From assembly GCA_002269645.1 (NCBI GenBank), contig NIVC01000708.1, forward strand, positions 372,001-436,000: DNA of 64,000 bases, in the 5' to 3' direction. The DNA is from Macrostomum lignano (Eukaryota). Made by a program: the position numbers and the translations under genes. The notes below the pieces were generated by a model. It did no database searches, was not told the origin of the DNA, and was given only the letters and a program-made list of their open reading frames with translations. Shown here one piece after another: positions 23,072-62,200 of the stretch (positions are counted from its first letter, which is position 1; each line of letters opens with the position of its first letter).

Positions 23072-25386
23072 TCAGGTGAAGCTGACCCAGTTGTTTCCCA
23101 TACCCGTAGCCGCAGAGCCAATCGGAAACGAGGCCGGCCGTGAAACTCCGGTCCCGTAGCGACTCAAAATCTGAGCTTTGAACGGCGAGCTGAACTGCAA
23201 CAGGTCCGTCTCGGAACTGCTCTCTGGTGCCGGTGCTGGTACCGAGTCGCCGATTAGAGCTGACCAATCCTCGATGCTGTCAGTCTGCGCCTGCTGGGGC
23301 CGCGGAGGCAAAGTCGACGGAGGCGACACGAAATGGACGTGGGCGGGGCCGCCAATGCTGTGCGAAGACGAGGCAGCTGAGTGCAGCGAAGCGGCATCAT
23401 TATTGTTGCTGCCGCTGTCCGAGTCGTCGATGCTGATCAGTACACCTTCACGACTGCCCTCGCTAACGTCACCGCCGACTCCGCTGTTCAGCATGACGGT
23501 TGGAGCCAAACTATCGTTCAGAGACTTAACTACTCCATCGGCTTCTTCAAAGCCTTCTTCAGCTTCGTCTTCTTCAGCATCATCATCGCTTTCTAATTTC
23601 TCTCCGATTAGCTCCGGTTTCTGTGGAAGCTGCTGAGCAGCCGAGTGGGCCGAAGCCAACCGTTTGGAGAGCAGGTTAGAGCGCACCCTGCGACCAATGT
23701 TGCGCGGCAGGTTGACGATGGCTCGCTTGCGCTGGTGGCTCGCCAGCAGCCGATCAGCGGCCCGATTGAACGCGTCGTAATGAGACTCGGATGGGCCGGC
23801 GGCTAGGTAGCGGTCGGCAAACTCGTGGAACAGCTGCGAGCCGGACAGGCGGCGCAGGAACGGCCGGTGCGACTCAGGACTGGCGGCTAGGAAGGCGTCC
23901 AGGTTGAACTCCGAGCCGGCCGGCTGCTGTCGAATCGGCGCCAGCAGTTCCACGGTGACTCGCAGCAGGGCCTGGGAAAAGGCGTCGCCTGGGGCGCTGG
24001 AGGATCGAGAGCGGCTTAGAGAACGCTTGGCGGCGCGCACGAGTCCTTAGAAAATGAATGTGTAGATACTGGCTGTTAAGAAAGAGGCTTACGTGGAATC
24101 TGGGAGGCTAGTCTTAGAATCGGGGATGTCGGCGGTGGCGCAGCAATTAAGGATTGGGAGGGGGGCTGGCAAGCGGTTCAGCAACTGAGGATCTGGGAGA
24201 GTGGCGAGATGCGGTCACAAAGAATGACCGCTTCAGACAGGAAAGGCTAAAGGACTCACTCTTGGGTAGCCCGAGCTGCTCAGCAGAGACCTCGGCGCCA
24301 TCAGCCACAAACAGATCTCCACTATCCAGATTTACCAGAGCAAAATCTCGGTCGGCAAAATTGGCGTCAATTTTGGCCCGGTTAGTAACGTAGAGAGCCT
24401 CAACTAAGCCGAAAACGCAGGGCACAAGACAGCCGATGTGGTCAATATTGGCAGCGGAGAGGCTGGGCGCGAACACGTGCTCCCAGCTGAACGGGTACAG
24501 CATAGAAACGCAGCCGAAGGCGCACAGAGTCAAGCGATCCAAGCGTCTTTGAAAAAAACGCGATGGAAATAATTTATGGAAACGATACGAAAAATGAGTA
24601 CGATAGGTACTCATAGGTAGGTACTACGATAGCTGCACCATCTAGCTCAGTAGGAAGCTCGAGGACTAATATCCCTGTTGGAGGATAATAAGACTAGCAT
24701 ATTTACCTGGCAACCAGAAGCAGTTTTCGCTCAGTAAGCATAGCGGTCAGCAGGTACAGCAAGGTGTCCGAACTGCGGCCAAGCCGGTCGGACAGTTCAC
24801 GCACCGGACCCCACCGGCCAGTGTCCGGCAACTGGCTGTCCCGGTGTCCGGTCGGCTGTCCCATGGTGGCCGAGGCGGCCAGTTGCTGAGAAATGGCCAG
24901 CACCGGGTCGACCGGCCACTGGCTGCTGAGCTGTCGCAGCAAGGCCGGAAAGATGTCGAACCCTGGCCGTCTAGTGACCAACGCCAAGCACTCGACGATG
25001 CAGTCCGCCTCTACATGCAGTCGGGTGAACACAGCAAACAAGAAGGTGAACCGAGAGTTGATGTCGGTGAAGGCAGTGCAGAGGGTGTCACCATCCTCAG
25101 GCTGCCAGTTGGAGCCGCGGCTGTCGCAGCAGTCTGGCAGCGCGTATTCAACAACTCGAATACGCCAGTCGTCCACGGCGGAAAAGGCCGCCACAACGGA
25201 GGTTGGACCGCCGCATAGGCGTCGGCGCAGACGGTAGAGAGCCTCAAATGCTGAAGCGCAGGATTCTGGCGGCAGTAGCCGACTGTGAATGCCCTGCTTC
25301 ATCGGACTAGCAGACTTTGCTGTCCCAGCTGATGCCGCTGCGGGAGGCAAGCAACCAAACAGGTTTAGCACAGCTGGCATACACAT
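23072..25386 (-). CDS. DENND1: DENN-domain Rab GEF, connecdenn/DENND1-like, about 646 aa
   Basis: Exons 25386-24707, 24546-24260 and 24045-23072 join in phase. Core DENN motif LTERKLLLVARRLDRLT...MLYPFSWEHVFAPSL and dDENN motif FLRRLSGSQLFHEF are present. The tail has a clathrin box (LISID) and a C-terminal WVSF(T) AP-2-binding-type motif, which favours DENND1 over DENND2. Confidence 0.8.
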
Positions 25387-29203: not shown

Positions 29204-29379
29204 ACAATTTACGCTCGTAGGCTCAGAGCCATAAAGATAAGAAGCTCCCCAGTGGGAACGTACATTGTGGTTATAGAAGTTAATTAAACTATTTAAAAGC
29301 AATGTGCAGTTAGTATGCTCATATACGAGTACCATAATAGTATAGAATTTCGAGCCACTGAATCCTAGCAACCGGTGAT

Positions 29380-32231
29380 TCATGCGGAACTGAGCAGAGA
29401 CGCGAAGCGCGCACCTTTTTGCACGTAGATATTCGCATAGGGGCCGTCATTCTGCTGCATCTCAACGCCGCGCACCTTGCACAGAGTGAGCAGAGTGTAG
29501 AATTTGGCGGCTGCCGCCTTTCGCCCATTGCCGATAGTGAGCTCGGACACGGTGCACGGCTCGGCCGCTGACCGGCCTTCCAGACGCAGCTGTAGAACCT
29601 TCAGCATGGCCGCGCCGCGTCGTTCGGTGCGCGCCTCCTCGGTGGCCTCTTCAACATCCTCGCAAGTGATCTGGCGGTCGAGATCCTCTTCGGCAGACAG
29701 GCCGGTGGGGTTGAAGACGCTAGGCGGGCCGCCAACTTGGTCAACAATGTCGGTGTCGCCGTGGTGGAAGGGGAACGGCGTGTGGACGCTGCCGTGCAGC
29801 GGCACGGAGGCCGGGATGAGCGGCTGGTCAGCCGGAGCGGAGGAGGCGATCAGCGGGTCCGTGTTGGTGCTGATGAGGCCGTGGCTAAGCTCCTCGCGGA
29901 TCGGTGTCATGGCGACGCTCTCGTGATGCTGATGATGGTGATGATGCGGCGTCTCGCTAGTGATGAGCTCTTGAAGGTCGCGCATGTCAGCGTCCTCGTC
30001 TTCGGCGGCGGCGGCGGCAGCAGCAGCCGCAGCGTCGGCACCACTGGCGGCCGGGCGGGTGCGCGCGTTCTGAGCAAAGAGGCGCAGTAGGCGGTCGCTG
30101 AGATGGAGGCGGGCCGTGTGCGACAGAAGCCGGTCAACGCTGCCGGTCTCCTTCCACTGCATGAGCTTCTTAGTTGGCGGGGCCAAGTCCAGCACGGTGA
30201 CGATCTCGGACGTGTCCTGCATGTGAGCCTTCATCAGCTCGGACGGGATCGATTTCTGGTCGTCAATAATGAGGCGACGCCGGCGTGCCCGACGAGCGGT
30301 CACGTGGCTGCGCACGCTGGGCTCGGACGGGCCGCTGGCTCCTTGCTGGTGATGCTGACCGGCCTGCTGGTGCTGCTGGTGCTGATGGCTGCCGACAGCC
30401 GACGCAGATGAAATGTCCGGCAGCGGCGGCAGGGCGTACCGGGACTCCTGCTCGCCAACGACGCTACTGGGAGCCGTTGGCTGAGGCTGAGGCTGCAGGT
30501 CGATTTCGGACAGCACGTTTTCGAAGTGCCGCTTAGTGGTCAGATCGTCGAATAGGTCGGTTGGCTCGAAGTCGCCGCCGAAGCCGTCCTCGTCGTCGTC
30601 ATCGTCTCCGGCGGGGCCGGCCAGCAGGCCGATTTCGTCGGCGGCGTTCTCCATGTCCACCAGGGTGCTGTCCTGGTGCTGCTGGTTAGAGTGCCGGCCG
30701 CGGCCGATGCTGCCGATGTCGTCAGCCTGGCCGGTGCTGTTGGCGCCCTGCCAGATTTTTAAGGGCGGTGCGGATTAGCGAATAGAGACATGGATAAGTC
30801 AGGATTATGGGGAACTCCTGGAGACTGATTGCTAAGGCTTATAGCAGAGGCCACGTCTTCTTTCCAGGCGTCAGATGGGGATCAAAGGATAATTATTTTC
30901 AGGGGTAAGAGGGAGGTTCGCAATGGGGCCAGAGGGCAATTTCTAATGAGGTCAGAGGGCGATTTCTAATGAGGTCAGAGGGCGATTTCTAATGAGGTCA
31001 GAAGGCGGTTCCTAATTGGGTCAGAGGACGGTTCCTAATTGGGTCAGAGGGCGGTTCCTAATGGGGTCAGAGGACGGTTCCTAATTTGGTCAGAGGGCGG
31101 TTCCTAATGGGGTCAGAGGGCGATTCCTAATGGGATCAGAGGGCGGTTCCTAATGGGATCAGAGGACAGTTTCTAATGGGATCAGATGACAGTTTCTAAT
31201 GGGATCAGAGGACAGTTTCTAATGGGATCAGAGGACTGTTCCTAATGGGGCAGAGGGCGGTTCCTAATGGGATCAGAGGACTGTTCCTAATGGGGCAGAG
31301 GGCGATTCCTAATGGGGCAGAGGGTGATTCCTAATGGAGTCAGAGGGTGATTCCTAATGGGGTCAGAGGGCGGTTCCTAATGAGGTCAGAGGGGGGTTCC
31401 TAATGGGGTCAGAGGGCGGTTCCTGATGAGGTCAGAGGGCGGTTCCTAATGAGGTCAGAGGGCGGTTCCTAATAGGATCAGAGGACGGTTCCTAATGTGG
31501 CAGAGGGTGATTCCTAATGGAGTCAGAGGACGGTTCCTAATGGGGTCAGAGGGCGGGGGTTCATGCTATAGAAGATAGGAGTAATGAAGAAGCCAATCGG
31601 CGATAATGAGGCAGAACTGTCAAACTGAGTGCCAAAACAGTTACTAATTAGTGCTCTGGCCCCATCATAGCTACAAATAAAGTACCTGAGAGTACAGGCT
31701 CTCTGCGCCGGCGTCTCGCATAGTTTCCAGGGCCGCCTCGCCGAAATCGTCGTCAGGCCGGCCCAGATTGATCTCGGCCTCGCCGGCGTCCAGCTCCTTC
31801 ATGGTGATGTCCTCGGGCCGGCTGGTGTGCACCACCGGCACGCTGAGCTGGTCGGCAATGTGGGTCAGATCCTCGGACTCGAAGTCCTGCAGATTGTCTG
31901 GCAGGGTGATGGCGGCGGCGGCAGCCTCTCGACTCTTCTCTGGCAGGTCGACGGCGCCCGGCCGGAAGGCCATCTTGATCTTGACGTAGGCCTCGTTACA
32001 GTCGGCCAGGAGGTACTTGGCCTTGCGATTGTAGATTTTCACAACGCCAAGCAGCAGATGGCCGGATGTGCGCAGAGCCATTTTCACCTTGGGCTCGAGG
32101 ATGGCCTCAACGCTAGACGAGATGTTAGTCTCAAACACGTGAGCCTTGGTGAGCTTTTTGTCCCAGTGGGCGGCCAGCCAGATTTTGGCCAGCGGGCCCT
32201 TCTTAGTCAGCACGAAATGCGCGTAGAACAT
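29380..32231 (-). CDS. RAD21: Cohesin kleisin subunit RAD21/SCC1, about 637 aa
   Basis: Exons 32231-31686 and 30747-29380 (phase 0). The N-terminus [36 protein letters not shown] is canonical. Also present: an ExxR separase-type site (ETMR), the central [14 protein letters not shown] and [10 protein letters not shown] motifs, and a C-terminal winged helix [13 protein letters not shown]...[12 protein letters not shown]. Confidence 0.97.
30921..31558. repeat. 23-bp minisatellite in the RAD21 intron, about 27 copies
   Basis: Unit AATGGGGTCAGAGGGCGGTTCCT with variants. Confidence 0.95.
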
Positions 32232-35171
32232 GGCGGCGCCGACTCAATGAAGCTGCAAGTGGGCCATTTTTAAAGGCGTTTCAGAGCTGCCATTAGTGAT
32301 GAAACAATTAATAAATGAAAGAAATAATCAAGTTCCTAAGCTAGTTTTTTGCTAGAACCATGGTTACAGTATTGCAAGCACACTCCTAAGTGTCAGCGCA
32401 ATTAATAATGAATGAGCAGTCTGGGGTCCAACTTCAGGGTATCAAAATTAAAGTTAACGAGTCATGGCAAAAACTAGCAGAAAAACCTATTATTAGCTAA
32501 ACATAGGATAGGGATGCCCCTAGTGCTGATGTGCAGCTTTAATCTACCCAGGTGCTGCCTGGAAAAATCTAGCTCTCAAAATAGTTCATAATTAGCCCAA
32601 AACATGTCATCTACATGTAGCATGTATTATTAATGACATTATTGATATACATTTTACAAGATAATAATATATATATGCAAATTAGTAATGTTTTAGTAAA
32701 TTAAAGAAATACTTAAAATTCAAAAGGCACTTTTTTCCTAAAAAGTTTTGACTGATACAATGGAAAGTGGCAACACAATGGTTGGCTATGGTCAACTTCT
32801 TGTGTGTAAAAAGGGAATGTGTGAACTGGAAAATGTGACCAAGGGATAAAGGCTCATTAGATTGATTACCTTGTTGGGTTAAATAATAATCTTAGAGAAA
32901 AAATGCTATTTTTACAAAAAGAAATATTTATCATCACTGTTATATGAAAGTTTTTATTATAATTATTCCATATAGAACTTTAAAGAGAATATTTAGGGAA
33001 ATTTTCTGCCATAGCCTTGTTGACCATATGCAGTGGGGATTGCCCAAAGATGTTATTACCTATGCCACTCTCAATGCCACAAATGTGATTATCATGCTGG
33101 CCTTTGGCAATGTCATTTACCAGGTTGGGATAAAAACACAATGGCAGAATCTAGCAAGGAGCTTATAATTGGCTAGCAGCTTTGACCATCTGCGGGACCC
33201 CTAGACCTAGCTTTGCTGCAGGTCTACATTGCATCAAGATTAATGGTAGTGGTAGGATTACTTTATGACAATCTATAAGGTAGCTTGAATTTGAGTTTAA
33301 CAAATCTGTATTTATATAGGAACATAACATTTTACCTATCAAAGGTCATGCTAATAGGCAATAGCTAGACTAGCTAGCTTAAGCTAGAGGTTGCCAGAAA
33401 GATTACTAGCCTGAAGTTGGTTTCATTGTCCAAGCTAGCTAATCTCATGCTATATATATGTTATGACCAACCCTGGAAACCAATTTGTTGCCACTATCAA
33501 TGAGGTTGCAATTTACTAGTCATTTTATTATTACCCTAGGTTTATAACCTAGTAGGAAAGGAGACCTATGCCTTTTTTATATTGCTTTACAATACAGTGT
33601 TATAGGTATAAGGATGCATATATAGCTTTTGCATATATAGCTTATGTTTCCATAGGGTACTACTATTTTTACCCTCAGTCTAAGGCAATGTAGTATACTA
33701 TTAGTAAGGTAGTTAATAAGTTAGTTTACAAATTAGGTAGTAAGTTAGAACAAAGGAAAAACACCAGTAAACTTCATATCTCATATTTTATACTCTAAAT
33801 CTAATACACTGATATGCCATTGTATTGGCAATGCCATTCAGAATCAGACCAGCAAGAGACAAGCACTGAGATGTTGATCTTGACAATAATAACAATGTTG
33901 AGCCACAAGCAATGAATGAAGCAAGTACCATTACAAAGAAAACTTTTAAAGAAAAAGTCTTCTCAATAACTTTCTAGAAAAAATAAACCTTTCATTTTTA
34001 ATAAGACATTGAGGCCAAGATCAAGGAGCTAGCAGCTTCCCTACATTGCTCTTTTGTTATCCAGATCAGGTGGTGAATATACCCATGCCTTGTTGACTAC
34101 TGTCTGGATGCTAAGCATGATGTAGGTCTTCTGTCAGTCTTATTAGGCACACATAGGTTGGATGTGGCATAGTTTGAGCAAGAGGCCCTAAATCTGACAT
34201 AAACAGCTGCTAAGCAAAAGCATCTATAAACTTGATCTAATTATGTCAAGTAAGCTTGTCTAGGGCTTTGTCAAGACTCAAAGTTTAAACACCAAGTGAA
34301 TAGAATTTCTTTGGGAAGGAGAGGGATAAATTCTTTATAGTCTTATTGTTAAAAGTCAATTCACTAAATAAGCTAAGGTGCTAACTACTTTCACATACCC
34401 AAAACTAAATATCTTAGAAACTTCAAAGTCTAAAAACTTTATATCTATTATATTTTGGGATTGTAAAAGCAGTTTCTTTCCATATAAATATAAAGGTATA
34501 TTAGACACTTTTTTGGAGATATAAAAGCTATTTATTTGTTGTGCCAATTATGTGACTCTTTCTTAGCCCCATTGTTTGTTATAACATTTAAAAAACAACA
34601 CAAATGTAACCATTTCTAGGTGCTTCTTTTGAGCAAAGGGTGCCAAACCTGGCTGCAACTGCCTATCATTAGCTGCATTGTGCATATTTTGATTGCAATA
34701 CCATAATATCTTGCTAACCTGACACTATGGGTTACAGGCACCATATATCTAGCATCAATTTCATAGCAACAATAGACAAGACAACACTTTACTAGTTGTT
34801 CTATATGGAACCTGCCATTTAATAGCATGCTTTCTTAATTAGATAATTAAATTTAATTGTATGGATTATTTTAGAGGCTGAATATACATTAGTTAAAAAG
34901 TCTATCAATGCTTGACCAGTGCTCTTAGAAAGTATTAACAATCAGAAATAAACTTCTAATGAGATTAGAAAGAATATCATCTCTATCACAGCAGCAGGAA
35001 ATCAATTCCATAGGGACAAAAATTCTAGTGATGGACATGGATGGCTTTATATAAAATTGTTTTTGAAGTTTGTATGAAGTTTGTATGACTATGAAATGTC
35101 TATAAAATTAAAAAAATATCCTTTATAAACTGCTATTTGTACTGTTTTTAGAGCTGCTTTATTATATACTA

Positions 35172-41866: not shown

Positions 41867-44800
41867 ATGGCCGAAGTCGCGGTCGGCATTGACATTTCCT
41901 CCGGTGGCGAGGCTCGCAAGAAGAAGCGCTCATCAAGACGGGCCGAGGCTGGCGATGAGGCCGGCGAGAGGCGGCACCGGCGGAAGAAGTCCACCCAGCA
42001 GCCCGGCGACGCCGATGGAGGCGGCGATGGCGATGGTGAGCGGCGCAAGAAGAAGAAGAAAAACAGAGAGGACGAGACGCCCGAGGAAAAAGAAGAGCGA
42101 AGGCGTCGACGAAGGGAGAAGAAGCAGGCGAAGGCGGAGGCGGAGGCGGCTGCTGCCGCCACTGCTGCTGCGGCCGCGGCTGGCGTGGCGCCGACTGCAG
42201 ACGAAAGCGATGAAGATGGGGAGGCCAATTTTCTACCTGCCGCTCGCCCACCGCCCCCGCCTGTGCCGCAGCAGCGGGCTCCGGCGGCTGCCTCCGACAC
42301 TGCATCGGACGAGGATGCCAGAGGATTCGGCGAGGAGCCACCGAGGCGTCAGCAGCCGCCGCCGCCTGCACCGAAGCCGAAACCAAAGCCGAAGCCGGCA
42401 GCCAGGCCGCAAGTTCCGCCGCCGGCGTCCCCCTCGCCGCCGCCGCCCCCTCCGCCGCCGCCGCCGCAACCCCAGCAGCAGTTCTACCCGGCTGAGAGCG
42501 ACGAGGACGATGTTGAAGCTCACGATGCCAGGGTGGCAACTCCGCCGCCGCCGACGCCTCCGCCGCCCCCGCCTACGTCGGACCCGCGAGCGCAGCAAGC
42601 CGACAGCGAGGCGGATGAGGACGACCAGGATGACGACCAGTTCCGACCGCCGCAGTGGAACCGGCCGAGCACTCCGACGCCCCCGACCACGCCTCCGCCA
42701 CCGCCGACAACGACGAAACCGGCGCTGCCGAATCCGGCCAACCCAACCGACCTGCATCGCTATCTTGCCGCTACCCTGGATGACGAGGGCAGCGACGTCG
42801 GCGGGATGGAGCCGGAACCGCCAGCACGCCAGCAGCAGCCGCAGCACCAGCAGCAGCCACCATACCAGCAGCAACCATACCAGCAGCAGCCGCAGCAGCC
42901 ACCGTACCAGCAGCAGCCGCCGTACCAGCAGCAGCCTCCAGTATCTCCCGATGCTGAGTTCGATCGGCCCGACCGGCCGATATCGGCGTTTGGCGGCGGC
43001 GGCGTGCCCGGCGACCGCCAATCGGCTGCGCTGTCGTTATCGCGCGGCGAGGATCCGAACATGGAGCAGCCGCCGATTCCGGAGGGCAAAAAGCCGGGTG
43101 GCGGCCTCCTGGGCCGACTGTTTGCCTCGTTTCGTCGGGGCGGCTCCACGAAGCGCAAAGGCTCCACCGCCTCAGCTAAGAAGGCTCCGGGCACGGCGAT
43201 GGCATCACCGGGGGCTGGCGGAGCTCCTTCTACGTCGGCGGAATCGGCCGGTCTAGGCGAGCACGACAGGTGGAATTCGAACCCGGGACTATTCAACGCC
43301 AACGACACGCCGGGCAATACGTTTGACCAGAGACTGCAGCAGCCGCCTCAGCAGCCCGTGGCGCTCAGACAGCCAGTGCCAGGTGTGAGACCCCTGGCTG
43401 ACACCGAGGTTCGTGTCATTCTGCTGGACGGCGAAGAAATTGGCGTGCCAATACCGCGCAAAGCTACTGGCAGCGAGCTGATGGCTCGCGTCTGTGAGCA
43501 CATCGACCTACAGGAGATTGATTACTTTGGTCTAACCTACGTCGACGGAAAAGAACGCATGTGGTTCTGGTTGGACTGCGAGAAGCGAGTTCTGAAACAA
43601 CTGAAGCACTGCGAGAATCGAATGCTCAATTTCCAGGTAAGTCATAACTGCTGATTTTTAATTTAACTATGTTTCTGTTTCTACTTATGTAAGTAGGCTA
43701 CCGCGAACATGAGTTTAAAAATCTACCACGTAGAGTTGTGGTAGTGAGGCTCTCTACGTGCTCTCTAGTAAAAATTTCTTTAAATTCGGCTCTGGGTTTT
43801 GTCCGGAAAAGCGCATTTTCATTAAAAGACAACATTTGCCTCTTTCAACCTTAATATATGATACACTCACTTATTCAAAAGACATTTTTTACAAAAAAAT
43901 AATGAAATTGTAGCAATTTTTCTTTTGCGTCTTCAATTTCTACACAGTCGTGCTTTAGTTTTTTGCTCATGTCTCTTGAATCCACTTGACATGCGTGTAT
44001 TGGTAATCACTCGAAATTTTCCAGTAAAAATGCAGTTTAACTTGGCTTTAAAATTGTTATTATACTTCAAATTTTCCCATGCGATTGCCAACTTGATTGT
44101 TCCTGTGTTGATTTGTTCGGTTTTTCCAGCTTGATAAAAAATACTTGCTGCTAAAAGTATTAAGAGTGCGAGAGTGGCACGTTGCTGCTGTAAAAGCTGA
44201 AGAATGTTGTGGTCGTGAGCCTTCGAGGCTCTTTAAACAGAAACCTTTAGTTAGACTGTCTCTCCTAGTCCTATTCCTACATCTTCGCTTGTACTCAACA
44301 CCCACTAGGTGAAGTTCTACCCACCGGAGCCCAACATGCTAATGGCTGACGTGACACGCTATCAGCTGTGTCTACAGGTTAGACAGGACATCTACACAGG
44401 CAAGCTGCCCTGCACCTGGGTAACTCAAGCCCTGCTCGGCTCGTTCCAAGTTCAATCGGAGCTCGGTGACTTTGACCAAGCTGAGCACGGTGACATCGGC
44501 ACACTTGACTATCTGCAGAACTTCGAATTCGTGCACAACCAGACTCCGGAGCTTGTGAATAAGATTGCCGAGCTGCACCGCGGGCACAAGGGCATCACGC
44601 CCGAGGTCGCCGACCTGCGCTACTTGGAGACTGCCCGCCGGCTGGAGTTCTACGGAGTCGACCTACACCCGGCCCGGGATCTGGACGATGTTGACATCAC
44701 CATCGGGGTGTGCTTCGGCGGCGTGCTGGTGTACAAAGATCGCATGCGAATTTCGCGCTTCGCTTGGCCAAAAATTTTGCGCATCTCCTACAGGAAGAAC

Positions 44801-45546: not shown

Positions 45547-45664
45547 GTGAGTTGCTTGAGAACTGCTAATTCACCTATTGGGGATCATCGACTCCCTGAG
45601 GGTTTTTATTCCATAGCTTAGGCTTTCATATTCATATTAATAGAGATTTTATGCCCATGTGATT

Positions 45665-50782: not shown

Positions 50783-51111
50783 TTACGGCATGCGCGACTG
50801 CATCATCGGCGTGCTGCTGTTGTTCTCGGCGATGAAGTCGGCGATGTAGCGAACTCTTGGCTGATGCTGCTGCTGCTGCTGAGACTGCGAAGACTGGTGC
50901 GGCAGCGGCCACTCGCCGGAAGCCAGACACGCGGAATTCTGGTTGCTGAAAGGCGCTAAAAACGATGCAGCTGGCGCCAAATTGGAAGGACTCGCTGTGG
51001 GAAATTCCGGCGTTGGCGGACTGGCAAACATTCCTGGTTGCTGGTGCAGATAGCTGCTGCCGGGAGGCTGAGGATTCTGGAACGATGTCGAACCGTAGTA
51101 GGAAAAATACG

Positions 51112-51142
<31 letters not shown>

Positions 51143-52212
51143 ATGTTGATGTTGTTGCTGGTAGTGCTGCTGCAGTTGCATTGGACTTTTAGGACTCTGG
51201 AAGTACGATGGCCCTGAAGCTGCTGCGGCAGCGGCTGCGGCAGCGGCGGAAGCAGCGGAGCTGGCAATGAAATCGTGGGGCCCGTAGTCCACCTTGCGCA
51301 CGCGGCGGTCCTTGGCCCGTCGGTTTTTAAACCAGATCTGGAGATTGCATGGTGATTGGTTTGATGATTGAACATTGCTTTCATGGAAATCCTTCTGATT
51401 CCTGATCACTCAAAACGTCTTTATTGAAGGTCTTGAATCTGACATCCCAATCAGACTCCATGGCAAGCACTGGATTCACAAGGTAGACATTGATCCTGAT
51501 CACTTGCTGAGCTCAACTCTCTAATCTCCTCTGATCTCCCCTTTCATTACTCCCTCTCTCTGACCTCTCATATCTGACCTTAGCTTTGGTTTCCAACTAA
51601 CCCTTGTTTGATTGAACCCTCTACCTCTTTTGCAAGCTAGCTACTCTTTTTCACTTTTCCTTCTAATCAAATAAAATATCAGACTCAAACTCCCATCTCG
51701 CAGAATTTAAATTTACCGTCAATCCTGAGCTTTAAACATTTAAACTGATTGCTTCGATCGGCTTACCCTCTCTGAACATTCCCACTTTTCCGGCCTCTCC
51801 TTGTCTGATAACTTCTACTTTGTCGCAAAACCGCCATTCAACCCACATCTGTCTTGCCCCCGATTCCAATGCTAAGAGCAAGACGTAATAATTAAACTAC
51901 AGTTCTATCAAGGTGGCACGAATAGTCACGTACCAACACCTTCCTGTAGGGAATGCCAATCGTTCTGCTAAGCAACTCCAGTTCTCGATAATCGGGGTAC
52001 TTTTGCAACTCAAACATGCGCTCAAGTTCACGCCTCTGTACAGCCGTGAGATTGGCCCTTCGTCTCGGTAGCGTTGCCTTTGGCGTCTCTTGCAGTGCCA
52101 GTACAGGCGCAGACGCAGTGGCAGATGTTGATGCAATCGAACTAGAAGCTGGTGCAGCATCAGCATAGTGGAATGGACGGTTGAATTGCACAAAACTTGG
52201 AGTGCCTTCCAT
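50783..52212 (-). CDS. Divergent PRD-class K50 homeodomain transcription factor (goosecoid/Otx/Pitx-like), about 277 aa
   Basis: Exons 52212-51934 and 51337-50783. The homeodomain RRRANLTAVQRRELERMFELQKYPDYRELELLSRTIGIPYRKVL|IWFKNRRAKDRR has its intron at the PRD-typical position 46/47. Poly-Ala and poly-Gln tail. Confidence 0.85.
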
Positions 52213-52771: not shown

Positions 52772-52834
52772 TTTTAAAACTGAGCCTTCAAGTGTAACTC
52801 GATGGGTGGGTGATGCGTTTTCATTGTTGGGTGA

Positions 52835-52993: not shown

Positions 52994-54020
52994 GACAATA
53001 GCTACATCAATGAGTTGTGTGGTCTCTGAACTACTCGTAACTTTTCTTGTGCCCTTGATGAGCACCAGAAATTGGGGATTCAACTGCATTATTGGCTGGA
53101 GAACCGAACAAAGATTTCTTACAGTGGTGACCGACGTCAAGTCAGGTGGGGCACCAAAGGCCAAAGCTGAGAGATTCTTGCCTCCTCCTAGCTTAACTGT
53201 AAAAGATTTGCACCATGGAGGTCCCACTCCGTAAGGTAAAAATCTCTAAAGAGATCTTATATTATCAGGTCTTGCAGGACAAAAATACGGGGGCTGGAAT
53301 TTTTCGCTGGCCTTCTTGACATGGACGGATCGAGAAAATTTTTGCATGGCATGCAAGAGGGGGGCCATGCCCCCCCCCTCGGGTCCGCCCCTGCTTCTTG
53401 ATTTCTGATTGAATAGCTAATATACTCGTACATCGACTTTTAGCTTCTAGGTCAATTTGAAATCATTTTAATCATTGCATTCAAGCGAAATCATACGCGA
53501 TATCGATGAGTTCTCGCAATTTCCATGTAGAATTTGTGGAACTATTACTATCCCAAATTCTAAATGCAAAATGGTTTGCTTTCCAATCCGATCTCGCAAA
53601 TAACGTTACCTTTTGAGATTCAATACATTTCTTTCAATAGAGACGATAATGATTCGATTCTTGATTTATTAGAGTGATTACAAGTAGCATATATGTAAGT
53701 AGCCGAAAGCGGGGTGGTTCAAAAAATAATGCTCGCTAATCTTGTCCACCACCAAGAATTCAGCGAGTAGTAGTGAACTTTAGCTTGATAAAAGCCTTTT
53801 TAATAGACAAAATAAATTTGAAGAAGCAAATTCTTAAATGGTACTGATTTTTTAACTAATTTGTCAATATTGGTATCAACTAAATCTTTGTTGTGGGGCT
53901 AAGTTTGGCCCACCCCTCTTGTGTAGGTTGGCGTTACTTTAAGTCAGACTCTAGTATAAAACAGCCTCATTACTAGAGGGACAGAATTGAAAACTATTGC
54001 TATATCCGAGGAACAGTCTG

Positions 54021-54030
54021 GTCACGTGAC
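54021..54030. promoter_or_regulatory. Palindromic E-box GTCACGTGAC upstream of MTA1
   Basis: Perfect USF/TFE (CLEAR-type) palindrome about 155 nt upstream of the MTA1 ATG. Confidence 0.35.
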
Positions 54031-54185
54031 TTCGAGGAAGACCGGCCAAAGGAGTCTGAATTTTCTCAAAAAGACGATATATGAGAACTTCTGGTCATCA
54101 ATTGGATAGTTGACTATTATATTTTACATTTTTTCTTGCATTTTTAGTAAATATCAGCAATAAAAAGAGTTAATTCATCATCAGG

Positions 54186-56225
54186 ATGGCCGCTAACATG
54201 TACCGCGTCGGAGGTAAGAGCCTCATTTCTTTATGCACGCTTACTAACCCATGTTTTTGCGTTCTATTGAATCTGCTAGCACAATTTCATATTAGTAAAG
54301 TTTCAAGCACAAGTTTAAGAGTTTCCTGCTCTTCTTTCTAATAGATATTCTATAATCTACTTTTTATTTAAAAAATACACTTCAAATCATTGGATTTTTC
54401 TCATCTGATGAGCGCACGTAGAGAGCCTCAAAGTCTACCCTTGCAGCTTTTTCTGCCCTGCTTCAGCGCTACGACGGAGCAAAACGAGTGCGAGGGCTAG
54501 ATAGAATAGGCTTAATGCTGCAAGGTGTTAGTTGAGAATGAGAAAGAATGTGTTAGACTAACATTAAGAACTCTTGGCAGATAATAAGATTTATTTATTC
54601 ACCATAGGCTAAACATTTTAAAAAATAAGTCTCACTCACAAAATGATTTAGGAATCAAAGGCATATCATATCTCTAGAACCTATGGCCTATGCCTATGGG
54701 CTATGGCTATGCCTTAGATAAATAGAACCTGCTGTATATGATAGCTAAATTCTAAAGTGTTAAAAAATACAATTTATATTAAACCTATACATTATTATAA
54801 AAATTAGAAAAAATAAAAATTAAAGTAGTATTAAAAATATAATATGCCTATCTATCAGACCTTATAAAGTTATATACAATTTTGTAACCTAACCTATTAT
54901 AGCTAGGCCTATTAGGCCTTAAGCTAAGGCTAAATTTGAAAAAATATATATAGATATGATATTTCAACAAATTATAAATTAGGTCTAAAAGTAAGGCAAA
55001 TACTGAAATAGGTAATTTAAAAGTAACTTTTTCCTTTTTAATAAATATAAATCTTAATTGAAGTCTGTTTTTATAATATATTCCTTTTTCTTTCCTAAGG
55101 ATAGCTTATACCTTTCAACCCTCTAGGAATATAAGTGCATATTAGGATTAATATTGTGGGGGGAGATATTAATCTATATCCAATGTTAGCAATAGAAGCA
55201 AAATACAGAAGCAAAAAAAATTGTCCCCATTTTAAGGGCCAAGGGGGGCATGTCTTTAGTGTCCCCCTATGGCTATATGTATAAATAAAGACTATCTTAA
55301 ACGAAAGCTATAATCAAAGATTTATATACTATAAATTAGGCTAAAAAGAATCATTTTTTATAAACATTTCAAATTCTATTGGCTGCTTTCTATAGTTATT
55401 TATCACTTTTTTAAATTGCTTTTTGATGTAAAAATAATCAATAAAGGCTTTTTGTATTTTTTAGAAATCATAAACCAATGCAATTTTGGCTGAAATTGTA
55501 CATAACTCTTTACCTTCAACTCTTTATCCTCTTTATAATACCAAATCCCAAAGGCCACAATCTTTGCTTTTTATATACCTAACAAAAAAATGGTTTCTTA
55601 TAACCTAGCTCATGATAAGCCTATCACAGTCTACAAAACTTCCTTGAAATAAATCTTTAGCTCCATATTTTATATAATCCATATAGATTTAAAGTAATTC
55701 TTTTATATTGGGACAAGCTGTTGAAACCTGCGGATTTTGAACCTGGGGAATTCCAATACCTGGAACTACTTTTGCATGTATTCTGAAATCTAAGGCCATA
55801 CACAAACAAATTAATGATAGTAGGATAGAGGTAGAAATAAAATGGAGCACATTCGTGTAAAATTAGGGTTTGAGGCAAATGTTGATATTGTTTGCTGGGG
55901 TACTCCACAGAATGCCAGGCAATGTCTGTCTGACTCTAAAACATGTATTGGCAAACTCTGGCCTCTCCCTGACTCTCCCTACGTCCCTTGGATCCTTTAA
56001 AATTTCTATCGTCTCTCTGTTTCCTTTCTTCTCTCTCATCCCTCGTCTCTCCTCTCTCTTCTCTCTTCTCTTCTCTCGTATCTTCCCTCATCTCTCTTCT
56101 CTTTCATCTCTCTTATCTCATCTCTTCCCTATTCTTTTCTCTCTCCTCTCCTCTCTCCTTTCTACTTTTCGTTTTCTCTCTGCTCTCCTCTCTCCTATCT
56201 ACTCTTTCGTTTTCTCTCTCCTCTC

Positions 56226-56275
<50 letters not shown>

Positions 56276-59200
56276 GTCTTTCTCTCTTATCTCTCCTCCT
56301 CTCTCTACTCTCTCCCCTCTCAATTCTCCTCTTTCCTCTCCTCTCTCCTCACTCACTTCTCTACCTTTGTCTCTCCTCTCTCCTCTCGTCTCTGTAACCT
56401 CTCCTCTGTTCTCTCTACTCTCCCATCTCATCTCTGCTCTCTCCTCTCTACTCGCTCCTCTACTCTCTCCTCTTTACTCGCTCTTCTACTCTCTCCTCTT
56501 TACTTGCTCCTCTCTACTCTCTCCTCTCATAGTCCTCTCTCCCTCATCTCTCCTATTATCTTTTATCTTTTCTTTTATCCCCTCTGTCGCTTCTCCTCTC
56601 TTCGAATCGTCTATTCCTTCTTTCCACTCTCATCTGCCCCTCAGCTATGAGCTGGATTCTTTATCTGGCCTTTGAGGTAAAAGTCTGCCCATCCCTGCTT
56701 GGAAAGCCAGTTTGTGGAACGTAGTACTCTCATGGTTGTTCTCATGCTTTGATCACGTCATCTTTCTTGCCAATTTGCAGCCCTGAAAGGAATTTGTGTA
56801 TCTTCAGCTCCACTGCAGTCTGCATCAGTCTAACAACCAAGGAAATACGCATTTCTTAGAAGGCCATTTAATATTTACACAGTACCTTTAAAAGAAACCT
56901 AAAATTTCCATGGTGTGCCTAATTTAGTAGGGTTGTATTGCATTGCATCGCATCGCCTTTTCATAAATCTTTCGCTTTTACAAACCATGCTGGATAGTGG
57001 ATTCCCTCGATTTGCCAATTGCCAATTGCCATCCACTGTTAAACTGCTGCAGAGTTTGCCAATACAGAGGGGAGGGTAGGGATTCCAATCCCGGGATCCC
57101 GGGATCCCGGGATCCCGGGATTGGGGCCAAAAATCCGGGATTTGAATCCCGGGATTTTTTTGGGAATCGAATCCCGGGATTTTTAATCCCGGGATTGCAA
57201 AAGACCGGGATCGGGATCCCGGGATTTCAAGGCCTTAATCCCGGGATTGGTCCGGGATTAGAACGACCTTTCAATGCCTAAATTAGATAATTTAAAGTCT
57301 AAACGTTTATTTGAATAATAAAACATTTATTTGTTTTTGCTGTTTCTCAATGAAACGTTAAACATTTGCAAAGCTCCTGTCCTAATTGAGCTAAAAATTG
57401 TTAATGTGAACTGTAAATTATAGATAATTTTAACTTTTTTTTCGTTTTCTACCACGAGACGAGACTGAGGGCCTTTTCATATTGCTTGCTCTGGTTCCAT
57501 AACAAGAACCAATTTGTGAAGTATAAACTTTTTGTCTCCATAACTAGAGGGAGATACGTGCTATAAAGTTTTTATTATTGAATGACAGTCGCCAAGAAGA
57601 AAGTGAAAAATTGTGCTAAGTGAGGCTGTTAAGGCAGTCAAATATTAACAGAGTTTAATAGTTATACTGCTGTTTTTCTTCGAATTCCGAACCGATTCTG
57701 GTTCTGGAATTGGTAATATGAAAAGGCCCTGAGACTCTGAGAGTCGCGAGACCATGACTACTGCACGCGGCACGCCGCACAGTCCGTCTAGCAATTTAGG
57801 GATTCCAATCCCGGGATCCCGGGATCCCGGGATTGGGGCCAAAAATCCGGGATTTGAATCCCGGGATTTTTTTGGGAATCGAATCCCGGGATTTTTAATC
57901 CCGGGATTGCAAAAGCACCGGGATTCCGGGATTTTGAATCCCGGGATTTCAACAGCATCGGGATTTCGGGACTATTCAATCCCGGGATTGTAAAATGTCG
58001 GGATTTTGGAATCCCTAGGGGAGGGCAGTGGTTAGAATTTCTCACTAAACTGTTATGGCTAAACGTAGCCTCTCCACTCTCGGGGTGCAGAGAAGGTTAT
58101 AAATAAAGTTATTCCAAAACACTGTACATTCGCTATGTACATTCAGTCCTATCGCCTGACCCTTCGTCTGGCTCTGGGGGAATGAGTGAGTGAGTGGCAC
58201 AAACAACAGAAAAAGCAGACAAACTTCACATGCTTACAGTTTCTTTTTTGGTTGAGTTACAGAGTTGAAACTTTACATTTAGACAGAGAATGAGTCAATG
58301 AAGAATTGTGTCAAGTTTGAAGTCAATCGCTTTACGTGGAGCAAACTTATGGCAGTCGAAAGTTAGTCAATTTTGAAACCCATTTTGCACATCTGGGCCC
58401 AGATCGGTATCGGGAAAGAGAGGCAGGCGGGCGGAGGTTGGGGTGGTTGCTACGCTGAAAAAAACAGCCTAACTTTAAAAGTGCACAGCACCGCTCAGGA
58501 TTAACTTTGATACTCGAAATTTTACATGATTGTGCCAAAATAGTTAAAGATTATCTGTGTCAAATTTGAAGAGAATCGGTAGAAGTGGAGCGGCGCTATG
58601 GAGGATTAAGTGAAAAAATCGCGCATTTTGAGCAGTTTTTTGTACTTTTAGGTAGGAAGACTCAAATTTAGGAAATTTTAAGGTAGCCTAAGACATTCTC
58701 CGTAGTAAGTTTAGGGTGGGTGTAAAGTTTGGTGTCATTTGGTTGAGCGGTTTGGGAGTCCATAGCGAAGTAATTTGTCCACAGACAGACAGACAGACAG
58801 AGTTTTGATTTTTATATGTAGAGATTCTTGGGATTTCAAGACTTATATCCATGGTAAATTAATAAATTTTGAGTAATCTGTAAATATGGAGTCTGCAAAG
58901 GCTTAGATTTGACTAAGATTAAGAACTCTTGAGAAGTCAAAGGCCCAACCATGTAAAGGGTATGGTTAGTATTTTATTTGGTTATAAACTTTTGACTAAT
59001 GCTAGCTGGCATCCCAAATTTTGATTTGGCTTGTTAGCCAACTTTAGAATTTGGACCTAGGATGCCAAATGGCACTGCGACTCTGATTATTGAATAAAAT
59101 ATCCAAGTTGTCACTGCTTCCTGAATTTTAAATATAGCATTTTTAAATACAAGCAATCCATGCAATGCGCAGTCACCAATTGATACAGAAGCAACGCCAT

Positions 59201-62200
59201 TCAATTGCAGACTATGTGTACTTCGAGACCTCAGCCTCCGGACCATATCAGATTCGGCGTATTGAGGAGCTTACAAAGACCCCAACTGGCAATGTGGAAG
59301 CCAAGGTTATGTGCTTCTTTAGGCGGCGCGACATTTCTAATAATCTCATTAGCCAAGCTGACAAGCATCTGAGTAAGCGGCGTTGCTTTTCATTTTTTTT
59401 CGACTATCCTATCATTTCATTTAGATCAGAAAATGTAGACAAACTGCAACAGGAATAGTAGAGAGCCTCATTTTGCCTATTTTAACCCTCTTGGGTCTAT
59501 CTGAATGCTGTGTACTCCGGAATAAAGGTAGTAAACGTAGAGAGCCTCATCGTAGCGCCCGAGTGCGTGTGTTAGAGAAAAATTCGCATTAGACGAGATT
59601 TCGATTTTCGTCCAGCGCTGATGGGAAACTCCGATTGAATGGGAAAGTTTCAGCAGCTAGCGAAAGCAATTATTCCTGCTCCAAAAAAAGAACTGGCTTG
59701 TCAAAAGATGAGACAGACTGCTCCAAAGAAAGAACTGGCTTGTCAAGAGATACAGACAGCCTGTCATAGACAAACTGTGAGAAGAGACAGACGATCCACA
59801 GCCGACTTGTTTATTTTATCGTAATTTCGCACGGTTCAAAATCCAGCTTAAGGCTGGTTAATCTCGCTGGACCCTGTCAGTGAGACTGGCAAACAGACAA
59901 GGTGAGACTGGCAAATAGACAGTGAGACTGGCAAACACACAGTGACACTGGCAAACACACAGTGAGACTGGAAAATAGACAGTGAGACTGGCAAATAGAC
60001 AGTGTGAGACTGGCAAACACACAGTGAGACTGGCAAATAGGCAGTGTGAGACTGGCAAATAGGCAGTGTGAGACTGGCAAATAGACAGTGTGAGACTGGC
60101 AAACACACAGTGAGACTGGCAAATAGGCAGTGTGAGACTGGCAAATAGACAGTGTGAGACTGGCAGGCATCACATTAAACCTCGACCGACCGACTGACAG
60201 CAGACGAAAGCACCTCTCGGGGAGCATCTCTCCGCCAGAAAAGCTTCCTACAGACGAGCCGTGCCTAATAGAGTCTTCCCTCCTCCCCTAGGCCTGGACG
60301 ATGAGCCATCGGCAGCTGGCGAAGCCGAGGCGGCCAGCTCCGAGCCCAGCGGCGGAGGCCTCACGGAAGTTCAGCGGCACCAGCTGCGCCATCGAGAGCT
60401 GTTCCTATCCCGCCAGGTGGAGACCCTACCGGCCACAACCATCCGGGGAAAGTGCGCCGTGACCCTGCTGAACGAGACCGAGGCCCTGACCTCCTATCTG
60501 GCCAGGGACGACGCCTTTTATTACACCCTGACCTACGACACCGCGCAGAAGAGTTTACTGGCCGATCGCGGCGAAATCCGGGTCGGCGGCCGCTACCAGG
60601 CCGAGGTTCAACCGTTGCTAGGCGACGGAGAATCCGACGGCCGCGACCTGGCCCAGCTGGAGGAGCTGGTCTGGCGGCCAGATCACGGCCTGTCCGATGC
60701 CGACATTGACAAGTACCTGCTGGTGGCTCGGTCGGTAGGCTGCCTGGCCCGAGCTGTGGACGCCTGCAGCTCGGTGCGTCAGCCCGGACTGGCGGCTGCT
60801 GCGGCCGCGGCTAGTCGCGACTACACCCAGGTTTGTGGCAGGCTTACTTGGGCTTCCGGCGCTCTAGAGATATGAAATTCAATAAATAGGGATTTGGGTC
60901 CTCGGGACATTAATAATTCGGGATATAGGATGCGAGGAATCACTGGGATTCGGAAATTAAGATTCAATAGGGGATTCCGGGATTAGAATTCGAGATCTGG
61001 GGTTCGGGGATTAGGATTCGGAACCTGGGATTCGGGATCTGGGATTTGGGATTAGGATTCGGAACCTGGGATTAGGGGATTTTGATTCGGGATCTGGGAT
61101 TTGGGATTAGGATTCGGAACCTGGGATTCGGGATCTGGGATTTGGGATTAGAATTCGGAACCTGGGATTCGGGATCTGAGATTTGGGATTAGGATTCGGA
61201 ACCTGGGATTCGGGATCTGAGATTTGGGATTAGGATTCGGGATTAGGATTCGGAACCTGGGATCCCGGATCTGAGATTTGGGATTAGGATTCGGAACCTG
61301 GGATCCCGGATCTGAGATTTGGGATTAGGATTCGGGATTATGGATTAAAATTCGGGATTTGGGATTAGGATTCGGAACCTGGGATCCCGGATCTGAGATT
61401 TGGGATTAGGATTCGGGATTTGGGATTAGGATTCGGAACCTGGGATTTGGGATTAGGATTTGGAACCTGGGATTTGGGATTAGGATTCGGAACCTGGGAT
61501 TCGGGATCTGAGATTTTGAATTAGGATTCGGGATTTGGGATTAGGATTCGGAACCTGGGATTCCGGATCTGAGATTTGGGATTAGGATTCGGGATTTGAG
61601 ATTAGGATTCGGAACCTGGGATTTGGGATTAGGATTCGGAACCTGGGATTCGGGGATTTGGATTCGGGATTTGGGATTAGGATTCGGAACCTGGGATTTG
61701 GGATTAGGATTCGGAACCTGGGATTCGGGGATTTGGATTCGGGATTTGGGATTAGGATTCGGAACCTGGGATTTGGGATTATGATTCGGAACCTGGGATT
61801 CGGGGATTTGGATTCGGGATTTGGGATTAGGATTTGGGATTAGGATTTGGGATTAGGATTCGGATTCTGGGATTTGGGATTAGGATTCGGGATCTGGGAT
61901 TAAGGGATTGGGATTCGGAATCTGGGGTTCGGGATTTTGATTCGGGATCTGGGATTAGGGAATTAGGATTCGGAATCCGAGACTTGAAGAAGAGGCTTGG
62001 TGAGTTCGTAGTTTTAGATTAGCATCCCTGTATTTGTTAGTGACTTTATGACTTCTACAGCACAAAAGCATCAAACCGCCTCAAACTCGGCATTTCCAGG
62101 CCCACGCCTACCGAATGCTGCACTCGTCCAAGTACGATCTGGGCCGGGCCTTCTGCCGGCTGGTGACCGACTCTGGGCCCGTGCTGTGCCGCGACCAGCT

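What the first reader, a model, noticed from the sequence alone, without database searches (positions are those of the whole stretch)
24390..59549. Exact 13-mer GTAGAGAGCCTCA recurs six times, in three different genes
Seen at 24390-24402 and 25234-25246 (both inside DENN exons, read EALY on the coding strand), 43745-43757 (reverse complement, FERM intron 1), 54418-54430 (MTA1 intron 1), and 59458-59470 and 59537-59549 (MTA1 intron 2). A near copy GTAAGAGCCTCA forms the MTA1 intron-1 donor at 54214. Four copies extend to (A/C)ACGTAGAGAGCCTCA. For a pre-specified 13-mer, uniform chance gives about 0.002 hits per 64 kb on both strands; this one was spotted post hoc. Flanks are unrelated, so it is not a TE remnant. 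It occurs in both orientations relative to transcription, and the intronic copies lie within about 210 nt of a donor. Inference: a long DNA-level binding site (multi-zinc-finger, insulator or recruitment element) marking housekeeping gene bodies; I recognise no known motif.
Basis: partly seen in the sequence, partly recalled or inferred. Interest (0 to 1): 0.72.

Follow-up and report, generated by a model that had tools for sequence, protein, structure and literature searches.

The report
Exact 13-base word in flatworm genes
An exact 13-base DNA word occurs six times in the 5' parts of three neighbouring genes of the flatworm Macrostomum lignano, far more often than chance allows and not as transposon debris; it is most likely an undescribed protein-binding site, but its function is untested.

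Summary
GTAGAGAGCCTCA occurs exactly six times at the stated coordinates, against 0.01 expected. No 13-mer reached six copies in 100 Markov-simulated windows. There is no halo of decayed copies: six at edit distance 0, one at distance 1 (the MTA1 intron-1 donor), two at distance 2.

The window is Macrostomum lignano (Mlig_3_7, contig NIVC01000708.1). All six copies lie in transcribed regions, and the four intronic ones lie 84-204 nt from a donor.

The two exonic copies sit in ancestral DENND1-like coding sequence. Relatives show no gap there, and one paralogue reads EALF with 11/13 bases, so these copies are not insertions or transposon remnants.

Flanks are unrelated beyond a soft (A/C)AC extension. 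No Rfam family or shared RNA fold was found, and the word lies on either strand relative to the host gene.

Two homeologous contigs keep 11 of 12 copies, which is no more than neutral drift predicts (p about 0.17). An independent 26.7-kb locus and four other window genes have none, so "marks housekeeping gene bodies" is unsupported.

Best reading, with modest confidence: a near-invariant double-stranded DNA recognition site acting in promoter-proximal transcribed DNA. Main rival: local short-patch copying. Counting the word across the whole genome is the decisive next step.

The parts
24390..24402 (+). Copy 1 (extends to AACGTAGAGAGCCTCA from 24387). It lies in the second coding exon of the DENND1-like gene, which runs on the minus strand, and reads V-EALY-V. 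It is about 1.0 kb from the inferred transcription start.
   Evidence: The paralogue P0122 reads SEALF here with 11/13 bases identical and no gap. The copy is intact in both homeologous contigs.
25234..25246 (+). Copy 2 (preceded by GACG). It lies in the first coding exon of the DENND1-like gene and reads F-EALY-R. It is about 0.2 kb downstream of a TATA-like box at about 25462.
   Evidence: The relatives read FEVFY and FEFFY, and the paralogue DNA matches only 7/13 bases. The copy is intact in contig NIVC01003415.1. In NIVC01000666.1 a synonymous GAG to GAA change breaks it.
43745..43757 (-). Copy 3 (extends to CACGTAGAGAGCCTCA on the minus strand, up to 43760). It lies in FERM intron 1, 108 nt downstream of the donor, antisense to the gene. 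It is flanked by a local hairpin (CTACCAC...GTGGTAG) and an inverted partial copy, CACGTAGAG, at 43727-43735.
   Evidence: (fold z = -2.5 for this copy only). It is intact in both homeologs.
54418..54430 (+). Copy 4 (extends to CACGTAGAGAGCCTCA from 54415). It lies in MTA1 intron 1, 204 nt downstream of the donor, sense to the gene, at the start of a G+C-richer patch of about 110 nt in an A+T-rich intron.
   Evidence: It is intact in both homeologs.
59458..59470 (+). Copy 5 (preceded by ATA, so it lacks the ACG extension). It lies in MTA1 intron 2, 84 nt downstream of the donor.
   Evidence: It is intact in both homeologs.
59537..59549 (+). Copy 6 (extends to AACGTAGAGAGCCTCA from 59534). It lies in MTA1 intron 2, 163 nt downstream of the donor and 79 nt after copy 5.
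   Evidence: It is intact in both homeologs. The surrounding 500 nt of the intron are as conserved as the exons among the three genome copies.
54214..54225 (+). Near copy GTAAGAGCCTCA (one base deleted relative to the word). It is the 5' splice site of MTA1 intron 1. Whether it belongs to the set is uncertain.
   Evidence: It is the only hit at edit distance 1 in the window. It is conserved in both homeologs.

Best explanation
The word (core GTAGAGAGCCTCA, usually preceded by (A/C)AC, about 15-16 bp in all) is a cis-element read as double-stranded DNA by a highly sequence-specific factor. A protein with about five DNA-reading modules, such as a multi-zinc-finger protein, would fit that length. 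It sits in the promoter-proximal transcribed part of a subset of genes, here DENND1-like, a FERM-domain gene and MTA1.

Shown:
- The word is exact, non-random and independent of orientation.
- It lies only in transcribed DNA, close to 5' exon ends.
- In exons it is written into pre-existing coding sequence through codon choice and, at copy 2, two amino-acid replacements.

Inferred:
- That a protein binds it.
- That binding acts on the host gene, as an intragenic enhancer of the intron-mediated-enhancement type, a pausing or architectural site, or a recruitment site.

The identity of the factor and the direction of any effect are unknown.
For: - Six exact copies against 0.01 expected. No 13-mer reaches six copies in 100 simulated windows.
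- Sharp sequence specificity: edit-distance spectrum of 6/1/2 copies at distance 0/1/2.
- A softer 5' extension (AAC, CAC, CAC, AAC, gACGg, ATA), as at the edge of a binding motif.
- Both orientations relative to the host transcript, no shared RNA fold, and no Rfam or tRNA match. These point to DNA-level reading.
- The exonic copies lie in ancestral coding sequence without indels. At copy 2 the paralogue has only 7/13 bases and different residues (FEVFY), so the word was created there by substitutions.
- All copies lie in gene bodies, which make up 43% of the window by my rough gene bounds (p about 0.015). The intronic copies lie 84-204 nt from donors (p about 0.0015 to 0.004).
- A precedent exists for a short DNA motif that works from promoter-proximal introns, 5' UTR and coding sequence without splicing: TTNGATYTG in Arabidopsis (bioRxiv 10.1101/269852).
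Against: - Real binding motifs normally show degenerate variants, and none is seen here.
- Only three adjacent genes carry the word. Four other genes in the window and an independent 26.7-kb locus have none. This fits a local history as well as it fits a function.
- Conservation among the three homeologous genome copies is no better than neutral (joint p about 0.17). Copy 2 has a synonymous change in one homeolog.
- No binding, accessibility or expression data were available.
- The position statistics are post hoc and rest on six sites.
Confidence: 0.4

Rival explanations
1. Local short-patch copying without function. A 13-16-nt stretch, possibly originating in the DENN exon where it is ancestral coding sequence, was written into nearby sites. 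The process would be micro gene conversion or templated break repair. The result is identical words in one 35-kb neighbourhood.
For: - The copies are exact with no degenerate halo.
- All copies lie within 35 kb. There are none in the rest of the window or in an independent 26.7-kb locus.
- Copy 1 looks ancestral, with 11/13 bases in an old paralogue. Copy 2 is now identical to it over 14 nt although the paralogue has 7/13 there.
- Weak pairwise flank similarities exist: copies 1 and 6 share TAGTAA(A)C upstream (p = 0.023); copies 3 and 4 share GAG[A/C]GCAC (p = 0.011); copies 2 and 4 share a downstream 12-mer, TGCCCTGCTTCA.
- The copy 3 site shows local direct and inverted partial repeats typical of templated repair.
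Against: - The flank similarities are not significant after correction for 30 tests.
- No known mechanism moves patches of 13-16 nt between different genes 10-35 kb apart.
- Copying does not explain why the intronic copies all lie within about 200 nt of a donor, or why none is intergenic.
- All copies predate the split of the three homeologous contigs, so no event can be caught in progress.
Confidence: 0.22
2. An RNA-level or transcription-unit element. Possibilities are a splicing enhancer, a small-RNA target, or the core promoter or 5' end of short unannotated transcripts that start at the word. For DENN and FERM such transcripts would be antisense.
For: - The intronic copies lie near donors.
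- One near copy is itself a donor.
- Copies 4 and 6 open G+C-richer patches inside A+T-rich introns.
- Copies 3, 4 and 5 are followed by runs of T.
Against: - The word lies on the antisense strand of DENN and FERM but the sense strand of MTA1.
- No common secondary structure was found.
- No Rfam match lies near any copy, even at E <= 5.
- No C/D or H/ACA box arrangement appears in the flanks on reading the sequence.
Confidence: 0.1
3. Remnants of a mobile element: the terminal 13-21 nt of a transposon, LTR or MITE, or an excision footprint.
For: - The 3' boundary is sharp, ending in ...CA, and the 5' boundary is ragged.
- M. lignano is rich in transposons (PMC5730564).
Against: - The two exonic copies are not insertions. 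Relatives align without a gap and share the residues.
- There are no target-site duplications and no terminal inverted repeats (sequence read).
- There is no flank homology and there are no decayed copies.
- No longer parent element is present in the window. The one dispersed repeat in the window carries only an unrelated look-alike, AAACGTAGCCTC.
Confidence: 0.04
4. Chance, codon usage or an assembly artefact.
For: The word was noticed post hoc. EALY is an ordinary peptide.
Against: - Shuffles expect 0.01 copies.
- The maximum count for any 13-mer in 100 simulations is 4.
- The same copies are present in three separately assembled contigs.
Confidence: 0.01

Closest known systems
Intron-mediated-enhancement motif TTNGATYTG of Arabidopsis (Gallegos and Rose, bioRxiv 10.1101/269852)
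   Same: A short DNA word found in promoter-proximal introns that also acts from 5' UTR and coding sequence, only downstream of and near the transcription start, and without needing splicing. The word here likewise lies in first or second introns and in 5' coding exons.
   Different: The word here is 13-16 bp and invariant, against 9 bp and degenerate. The organism is an animal, not a plant. Copies lie up to about 2 kb from the start (5.4 kb in this contig because of a transposon insertion). No expression effect has been tested, and genome-wide enrichment is unknown.
Long sites of multi-zinc-finger architectural proteins (CTCF-type sites, about 15-20 bp)
   Same: The length and information content are similar. 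An intragenic or intronic location is common for such sites, and function is at the DNA level. From memory, the core TAGAGAGC resembles the YAGRKGGC part of the CTCF consensus at 7 of 8 positions.
   Different: The flanking consensus positions do not match, and an invariant G of the CTCF core is an A here. CTCF sites are degenerate. Whether M. lignano has a CTCF gene was not examined, and no boundary or loop data exist. The resemblance is a lead recalled from memory, not a test.
Over-represented genomic words maintained by a molecular drive in bacteria (DNA uptake sequences, Chi)
   Same: These are exact 8-12-mers found in both orientations, written into coding sequence through codon and residue choice, with few degenerate variants.
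   Different: Those are bacterial systems with known machinery (uptake receptors, RecBCD) and genome-wide density. No eukaryotic counterpart is known. Here only six copies in one 35-kb region were seen.

Membership tests
Transposon, MITE or LTR remnant | The copy is an insertion relative to the empty site or to orthologous sequence | tested here: not met
   The relatives P0122 and P0123 align without a gap at both exonic copies and share the residues (SEALF / AQPLY; FEVFY / FEFFY). Paralogue DNA matches 11/13 bases at copy 1. The intronic copies could not be tested because all three homeologs carry them.
Transposon, MITE or LTR remnant | Homologous flanks, target-site duplications or terminal inverted repeats, and a spectrum of decayed copies | tested here: not met
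   No shared flank k-mers beyond random. Extension alignments are not significant after multiple testing. The edit-distance spectrum is 6/1/2 at distance 0/1/2. No parent element is present in the window.
Structured non-coding RNA gene (snoRNA, miRNA, snRNA, tRNA) | Match to a covariance model, or a shared stable secondary structure | tested here: not met
   Rfam at gathering thresholds found 0 hits. At E <= 5 nothing lies near any copy. ARAGORN found 0 genes. Fold z-scores are -0.63, -0.63, -2.51, +0.35, 0.00 and +0.69, with no common structure.
5' splice site | The word lies at an exon-intron junction used by the host gene | tested here: not met
   Only the one-deletion variant at 54214 is a donor. 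The six exact copies are inside exons or 84-204 nt inside introns, and three are antisense to the host gene.
Intron-mediated-enhancement-type element | Located in transcribed DNA near the transcription start (promoter-proximal introns, 5' UTR, 5' coding sequence) | tested here: inconclusive
   All six copies are in gene bodies, in exons 1-2 or introns 1-2. The starts are inferred from TATA-like boxes, not measured. Distances range from about 0.2 to about 5.4 kb, or about 2.4 kb in the homeologs that lack the transposon insertion.
Intron-mediated-enhancement-type element | Raises mRNA output in a position-dependent, splicing-independent way | not testable with these tools
   This needs reporter assays. 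A transgenesis method exists for M. lignano (PMC5730564).
CTCF-type insulator site | Match to the CTCF consensus and presence of the factor in the genome | not tested
   Only a by-eye comparison with the consensus as I remember it: the core fits at 7/8 positions and the flanks do not. No motif library was available, and no search for a CTCF gene in M. lignano was made.
Genome-wide over-represented word | Enrichment across the whole genome over a background model | not testable with these tools
   Only about 91 kb of independent M. lignano DNA could be read: the window plus L131. There are 6 copies in the window and 0 in the 26.7-kb L131. The metagenome scan with the 15-mer gave only single chance hits.

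The most novel reading that the evidence does not exclude
M. lignano has a lineage-specific, nearly invariant 15-16-bp word that is written into the promoter-proximal transcribed DNA of a set of genes, introns and coding exons alike. Either an unknown high-specificity factor reads it, as an animal counterpart of plant intron-mediated-enhancement signals or as a new architectural site, or a molecular drive spreads it, as a eukaryotic analogue of bacterial uptake or Chi words. In either case it shapes codon and even residue choice in exons, as at DENN copy 2.
Probability: 0.2. Interest if true: 0.8.

Novelty: new member of a known kind. Interest (0 to 1): 0.5.

Why it matters
If the word is a real recognition site, it would be one of the longest and most invariant cis-elements described in a flatworm. 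It would give an entry point to gene-body or first-intron regulation in a regenerative model animal that has transgenesis and single-nucleus ATAC data.

The exonic copies would then be an example of a DNA signal constraining protein-coding sequence.

If instead the word spread by local copying, it would document an unusual short-patch templated process acting over tens of kilobases.

Either outcome can be reached cheaply, because the genome assembly and accessibility data are public.

Tried and rejected
1. In-frame 15-nt insertion at copy 1. This was suggested by a 5-residue excess relative to human DENND1A/B. It was rejected because closer relatives carry the same extra residues with no gap and the paralogue DNA is 11/13 identical.
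2. Secondary motifs in the flanks. None was found beyond random.
3. Sub-families from flank extension. The three best pairs have p = 0.011-0.033, which is not significant over 30 tests.
4. A parent element in the window. There is none. The dispersed repeat at 35171-37797 / 55713-58825 contains only the look-alike AAACGTAGCCTC.
5. RNA families and tRNAs. None was found. No shared fold was found.
6. Literature search for the string and its reverse complement. It returned only two unrelated papers, on plant mRNA export and on hepatitis C liver fibrosis. M. lignano genome and ATAC papers do not mention such a motif.
7. Metagenome scan with the 15-mer. It returned 120 contigs with one hit each, consistent with chance.
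8. Protein word-index searches. The DENN query found nothing and the Rad21 query found only distant relatives. Every listed Rad21 hit was at most 326 aa, against 637 aa for the M. lignano Rad21.
9. An exact look-up of the FERM exon-1 ORF and my 946-aa FERM reconstruction both failed. GenBank annotates only a 63-aa fragment at the FERM 5' end on this contig.
10. Homeolog conservation as a test of constraint. Eleven of 12 copies are kept, but the neutral expectation for the four intronic copies is already about 0.17, so the test is uninformative.
Full report
**Observation.**
The 13-mer GTAGAGAGCCTCA occurs exactly six times, at 24390+, 25234+, 43745-, 54418+, 59458+ and 59537+. Dinucleotide-preserving shuffles expect 0.01 copies. 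Because the word was noticed post hoc, I also asked how often any 13-mer recurs. In 100 order-3 Markov windows the commonest 13-mer reached 2-4 copies and never 6. In the real window it is the only dispersed, non-tandem 11-13-mer present at four or more loci.

The edit-distance spectrum is abrupt: six copies at distance 0, one at distance 1, two at distance 2 and 57 at distance 3. The single distance-1 hit is GTAAGAGCCTCA at 54214, which is the donor of MTA1 intron 1. Four copies extend 5' to (A/C)ACGTAGAGAGCCTCA, one has GACG-G and one has ATA. The 3' edge is sharp.

**Source and genes.**
A profile search returned a 626-aa protein that proved to be the window's own DENN product. Looking it up placed the window on contig NIVC01000708.1 of GCA_002269645.1, the Mlig_3_7 assembly of the free-living flatworm Macrostomum lignano. 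Pfam and sequence reading give the following genes:

| Gene | Strand | Position |
|---|---|---|
| Ig/FN3 gene | + | about 4.8-9.5 kb |
| KH-domain gene | - | 16618-19195 |
| DENND1-like gene | - | 23072 to about 25430 |
| Rad21 | - | 29380-32231 |
| FERM-domain gene | + | exon 1 41867-43636, exon 2 from 44309 |
| Homeobox gene | - | 50783-52212 |
| MTA1 | + | exon 1 54187-54213, exon 2 59211-59373, exon 3 from about 60290 |

I rebuilt Rad21 and the homeobox protein by splicing. Both matched GenBank entries exactly, PAA78097.1 and PAA78099.1.

**Position of the copies.**
All six copies lie in transcribed DNA.
- Copies 1 and 2 are in the first two coding exons of the DENN gene, on its antisense strand, and both read EALY.
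- Copy 3 is in FERM intron 1, antisense to the gene, 108 nt from the donor.
- Copy 4 is in MTA1 intron 1, sense to the gene, 204 nt from the donor.
- Copies 5 and 6 are in MTA1 intron 2, sense to the gene, 84 and 163 nt from the donor.

Gene bodies cover about 43% of the window by my rough gene bounds. The chance that five independent sites are all genic is about 0.015. The chance that one copy per intron lies as close to its donor as observed is about 0.0015, or about 0.004 using the shorter intron 1 of the homeologs. These numbers are post hoc and rest on few sites.

**Is it a mobile-element remnant or an insertion?**
An alignment with human DENND1A/B shows five extra residues exactly at copy 1. 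That suggested an in-frame 15-nt insertion, but the idea failed. Two closer relatives (about 52% identity; the one I could look up, P0122, is an M. lignano paralogue) align without a gap at both sites. They read SEALF and AQPLY at copy 1, and FEVFY and FEFFY at copy 2.

In the paralogue on contig NIVC01002106.1 the DNA at site 1 is TGAGGCTCTTTTC (11/13 bases). At site 2 it is TGAAGTGTTTTAT (7/13 bases). The exonic copies are therefore ancestral coding sequence. At copy 2 the word arose by substitutions, including two residue changes.

Further points against a mobile origin:
- Flanks of 150 nt on each side share no k-mers beyond random.
- No longer parent element is present in the window.
- Neither target-site duplications nor terminal inverted repeats are visible in the flanks.
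- There is no halo of decayed copies.

Extension alignments from the motif edges give three nominal hits: copies 1 and 6 upstream (p = 0.023), copies 3 and 4 upstream (p = 0.011), and copies 1 and 2 downstream (p = 0.033). Over 30 tests this is not significant.

**Is it RNA?**
Rfam finds nothing at gathering thresholds and nothing near any copy at E <= 5. There are no tRNAs. Folds of 81 nt around each copy share no structure. Only copy 3 has a notable local hairpin, with z = -2.5. The word is antisense to two host genes and sense to the third. A DNA-level reading is therefore favoured.

**Homeologs.**
M. lignano is a recent polyploid (PMC5730564; PMC10733133, listed). The 90% protein clusters led to two further contigs that carry the same gene order, NIVC01000666.1 and NIVC01003415.1. 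Copies 1, 3, 4, 5 and 6 and the donor variant are intact in both. Copy 2 is intact in one and carries a synonymous GAG to GAA change in the other. No extra, non-orthologous copy exists in either.

This shows that the copies predate the divergence of the three contigs and are not assembly artefacts. As evidence of constraint it is weak. The fraction of intronic 13-mers unchanged in all three contigs is 0.56 (FERM intron 1), 0.37 (MTA1 intron 1) and 0.90 (MTA1 intron 2). The joint neutral probability for the four intronic copies is therefore about 0.17.

Difference profiles show somewhat fewer changes around copies 3 and 4 than deeper in the introns. The first 500 nt of MTA1 intron 2 are as conserved as the exons. 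Gene conversion between homeologs could explain this as well as selection could.

**Distribution beyond the window.**
The only independent M. lignano DNA I could obtain is 26.7 kb around the DENN paralogue. It contains no copy at edit distance 0 or 1. Within the window, four of seven genes and all intergenic DNA have none. A scan of metagenome contigs with the 15-mer returned only single hits of the kind chance would give. The data therefore show a cluster in three adjacent genes. Whether the word is a genome-wide feature is unknown.

**Interpretation.**
The best-supported reading is a high-specificity double-stranded DNA recognition site of about 15-16 bp in promoter-proximal transcribed DNA (confidence about 0.4). 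The closest functional precedent I could document is the Arabidopsis motif TTNGATYTG. That motif is enriched in promoter-proximal introns and stimulates expression from introns, 5' UTR and coding sequence without splicing (bioRxiv 10.1101/269852). The length also fits a multi-zinc-finger site. The resemblance of TAGAGAGC to part of the CTCF consensus is only a recollection and was not tested.

The main rival is functionless local short-patch copying (about 0.22). It explains the exactness and the regional clustering better, but it has no known mechanism and does not explain the positional bias. RNA-level roles (about 0.1), mobile-element remnants (about 0.04) and chance or artefact (about 0.01) are less likely.

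**Verdict.**
The finding is real, statistically overwhelming and unexplained by any known family. Interest is moderate: the decisive test, a whole-genome count with positions, is trivial for anyone holding the assembly, and its outcome could move this from a curiosity to a new regulatory word.

Noticed in passing
window 55713-58825 and 35171-37797: A dispersed repeat of about 3 kb, 77-87% identical between its two copies. The copy inside MTA1 intron 1 has no counterpart in either homeologous contig, so it is a contig-specific insertion that lengthens that intron from about 1.9 to 5.0 kb.
   Followed up: partly
window 46463-47677: A perfect 26-nt tandem array (46.7 copies, 100% matches) downstream of the FERM gene. 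The arrays in the two homeologous contigs differ in length. About 19% of the window is minisatellite-like tandem repeat, often inside introns.
   Followed up: partly
window 41864-42052; L130 15301-19486: GenBank annotates only a 63-aa fragment at the 5' end of the FERM gene on this contig (62 aa on NIVC01000666.1), whereas NIVC01003415.1 has a 929-aa product. My three-exon reconstruction (946 aa, 41867-45618, stop at 45619) is not in the protein collection. The FERM gene model on this contig looks broken.
   Followed up: partly
window 59374-59880: The first 500 nt of MTA1 intron 2 show 0-1 differences per 50 nt among the three homeologous contigs. This is as conserved as the flanking exons and more conserved than the end of intron 1. 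It could be a conserved non-coding element or a recent conversion tract.
   Followed up: partly
window 18771-18848 and 19649-19726; also 14581-14651 and 15015-15082: Two pairs of long, near-perfect inverted repeats (about 78 and 70 nt). The first pair straddles the 5' end of the KH-domain gene. They could be MITE-like elements or hairpin-forming structures.
   Followed up: no
window 54019-54032: The palindromic E-box-like sequence GGTCACGTGACT lies about 160 nt upstream of the MTA1 start codon, in the gap shared with the divergently oriented homeobox gene. It is a possible shared promoter element.
   Followed up: no
L131 (NIVC01002106.1, 69260-95967): This is a second DENND1-like gene of M. 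lignano, 53% identical to the window's. Its annotated product (439 aa) ends in a stretch that aligns with none of the relatives. That suggests a frameshifted or read-through gene model.
   Followed up: no
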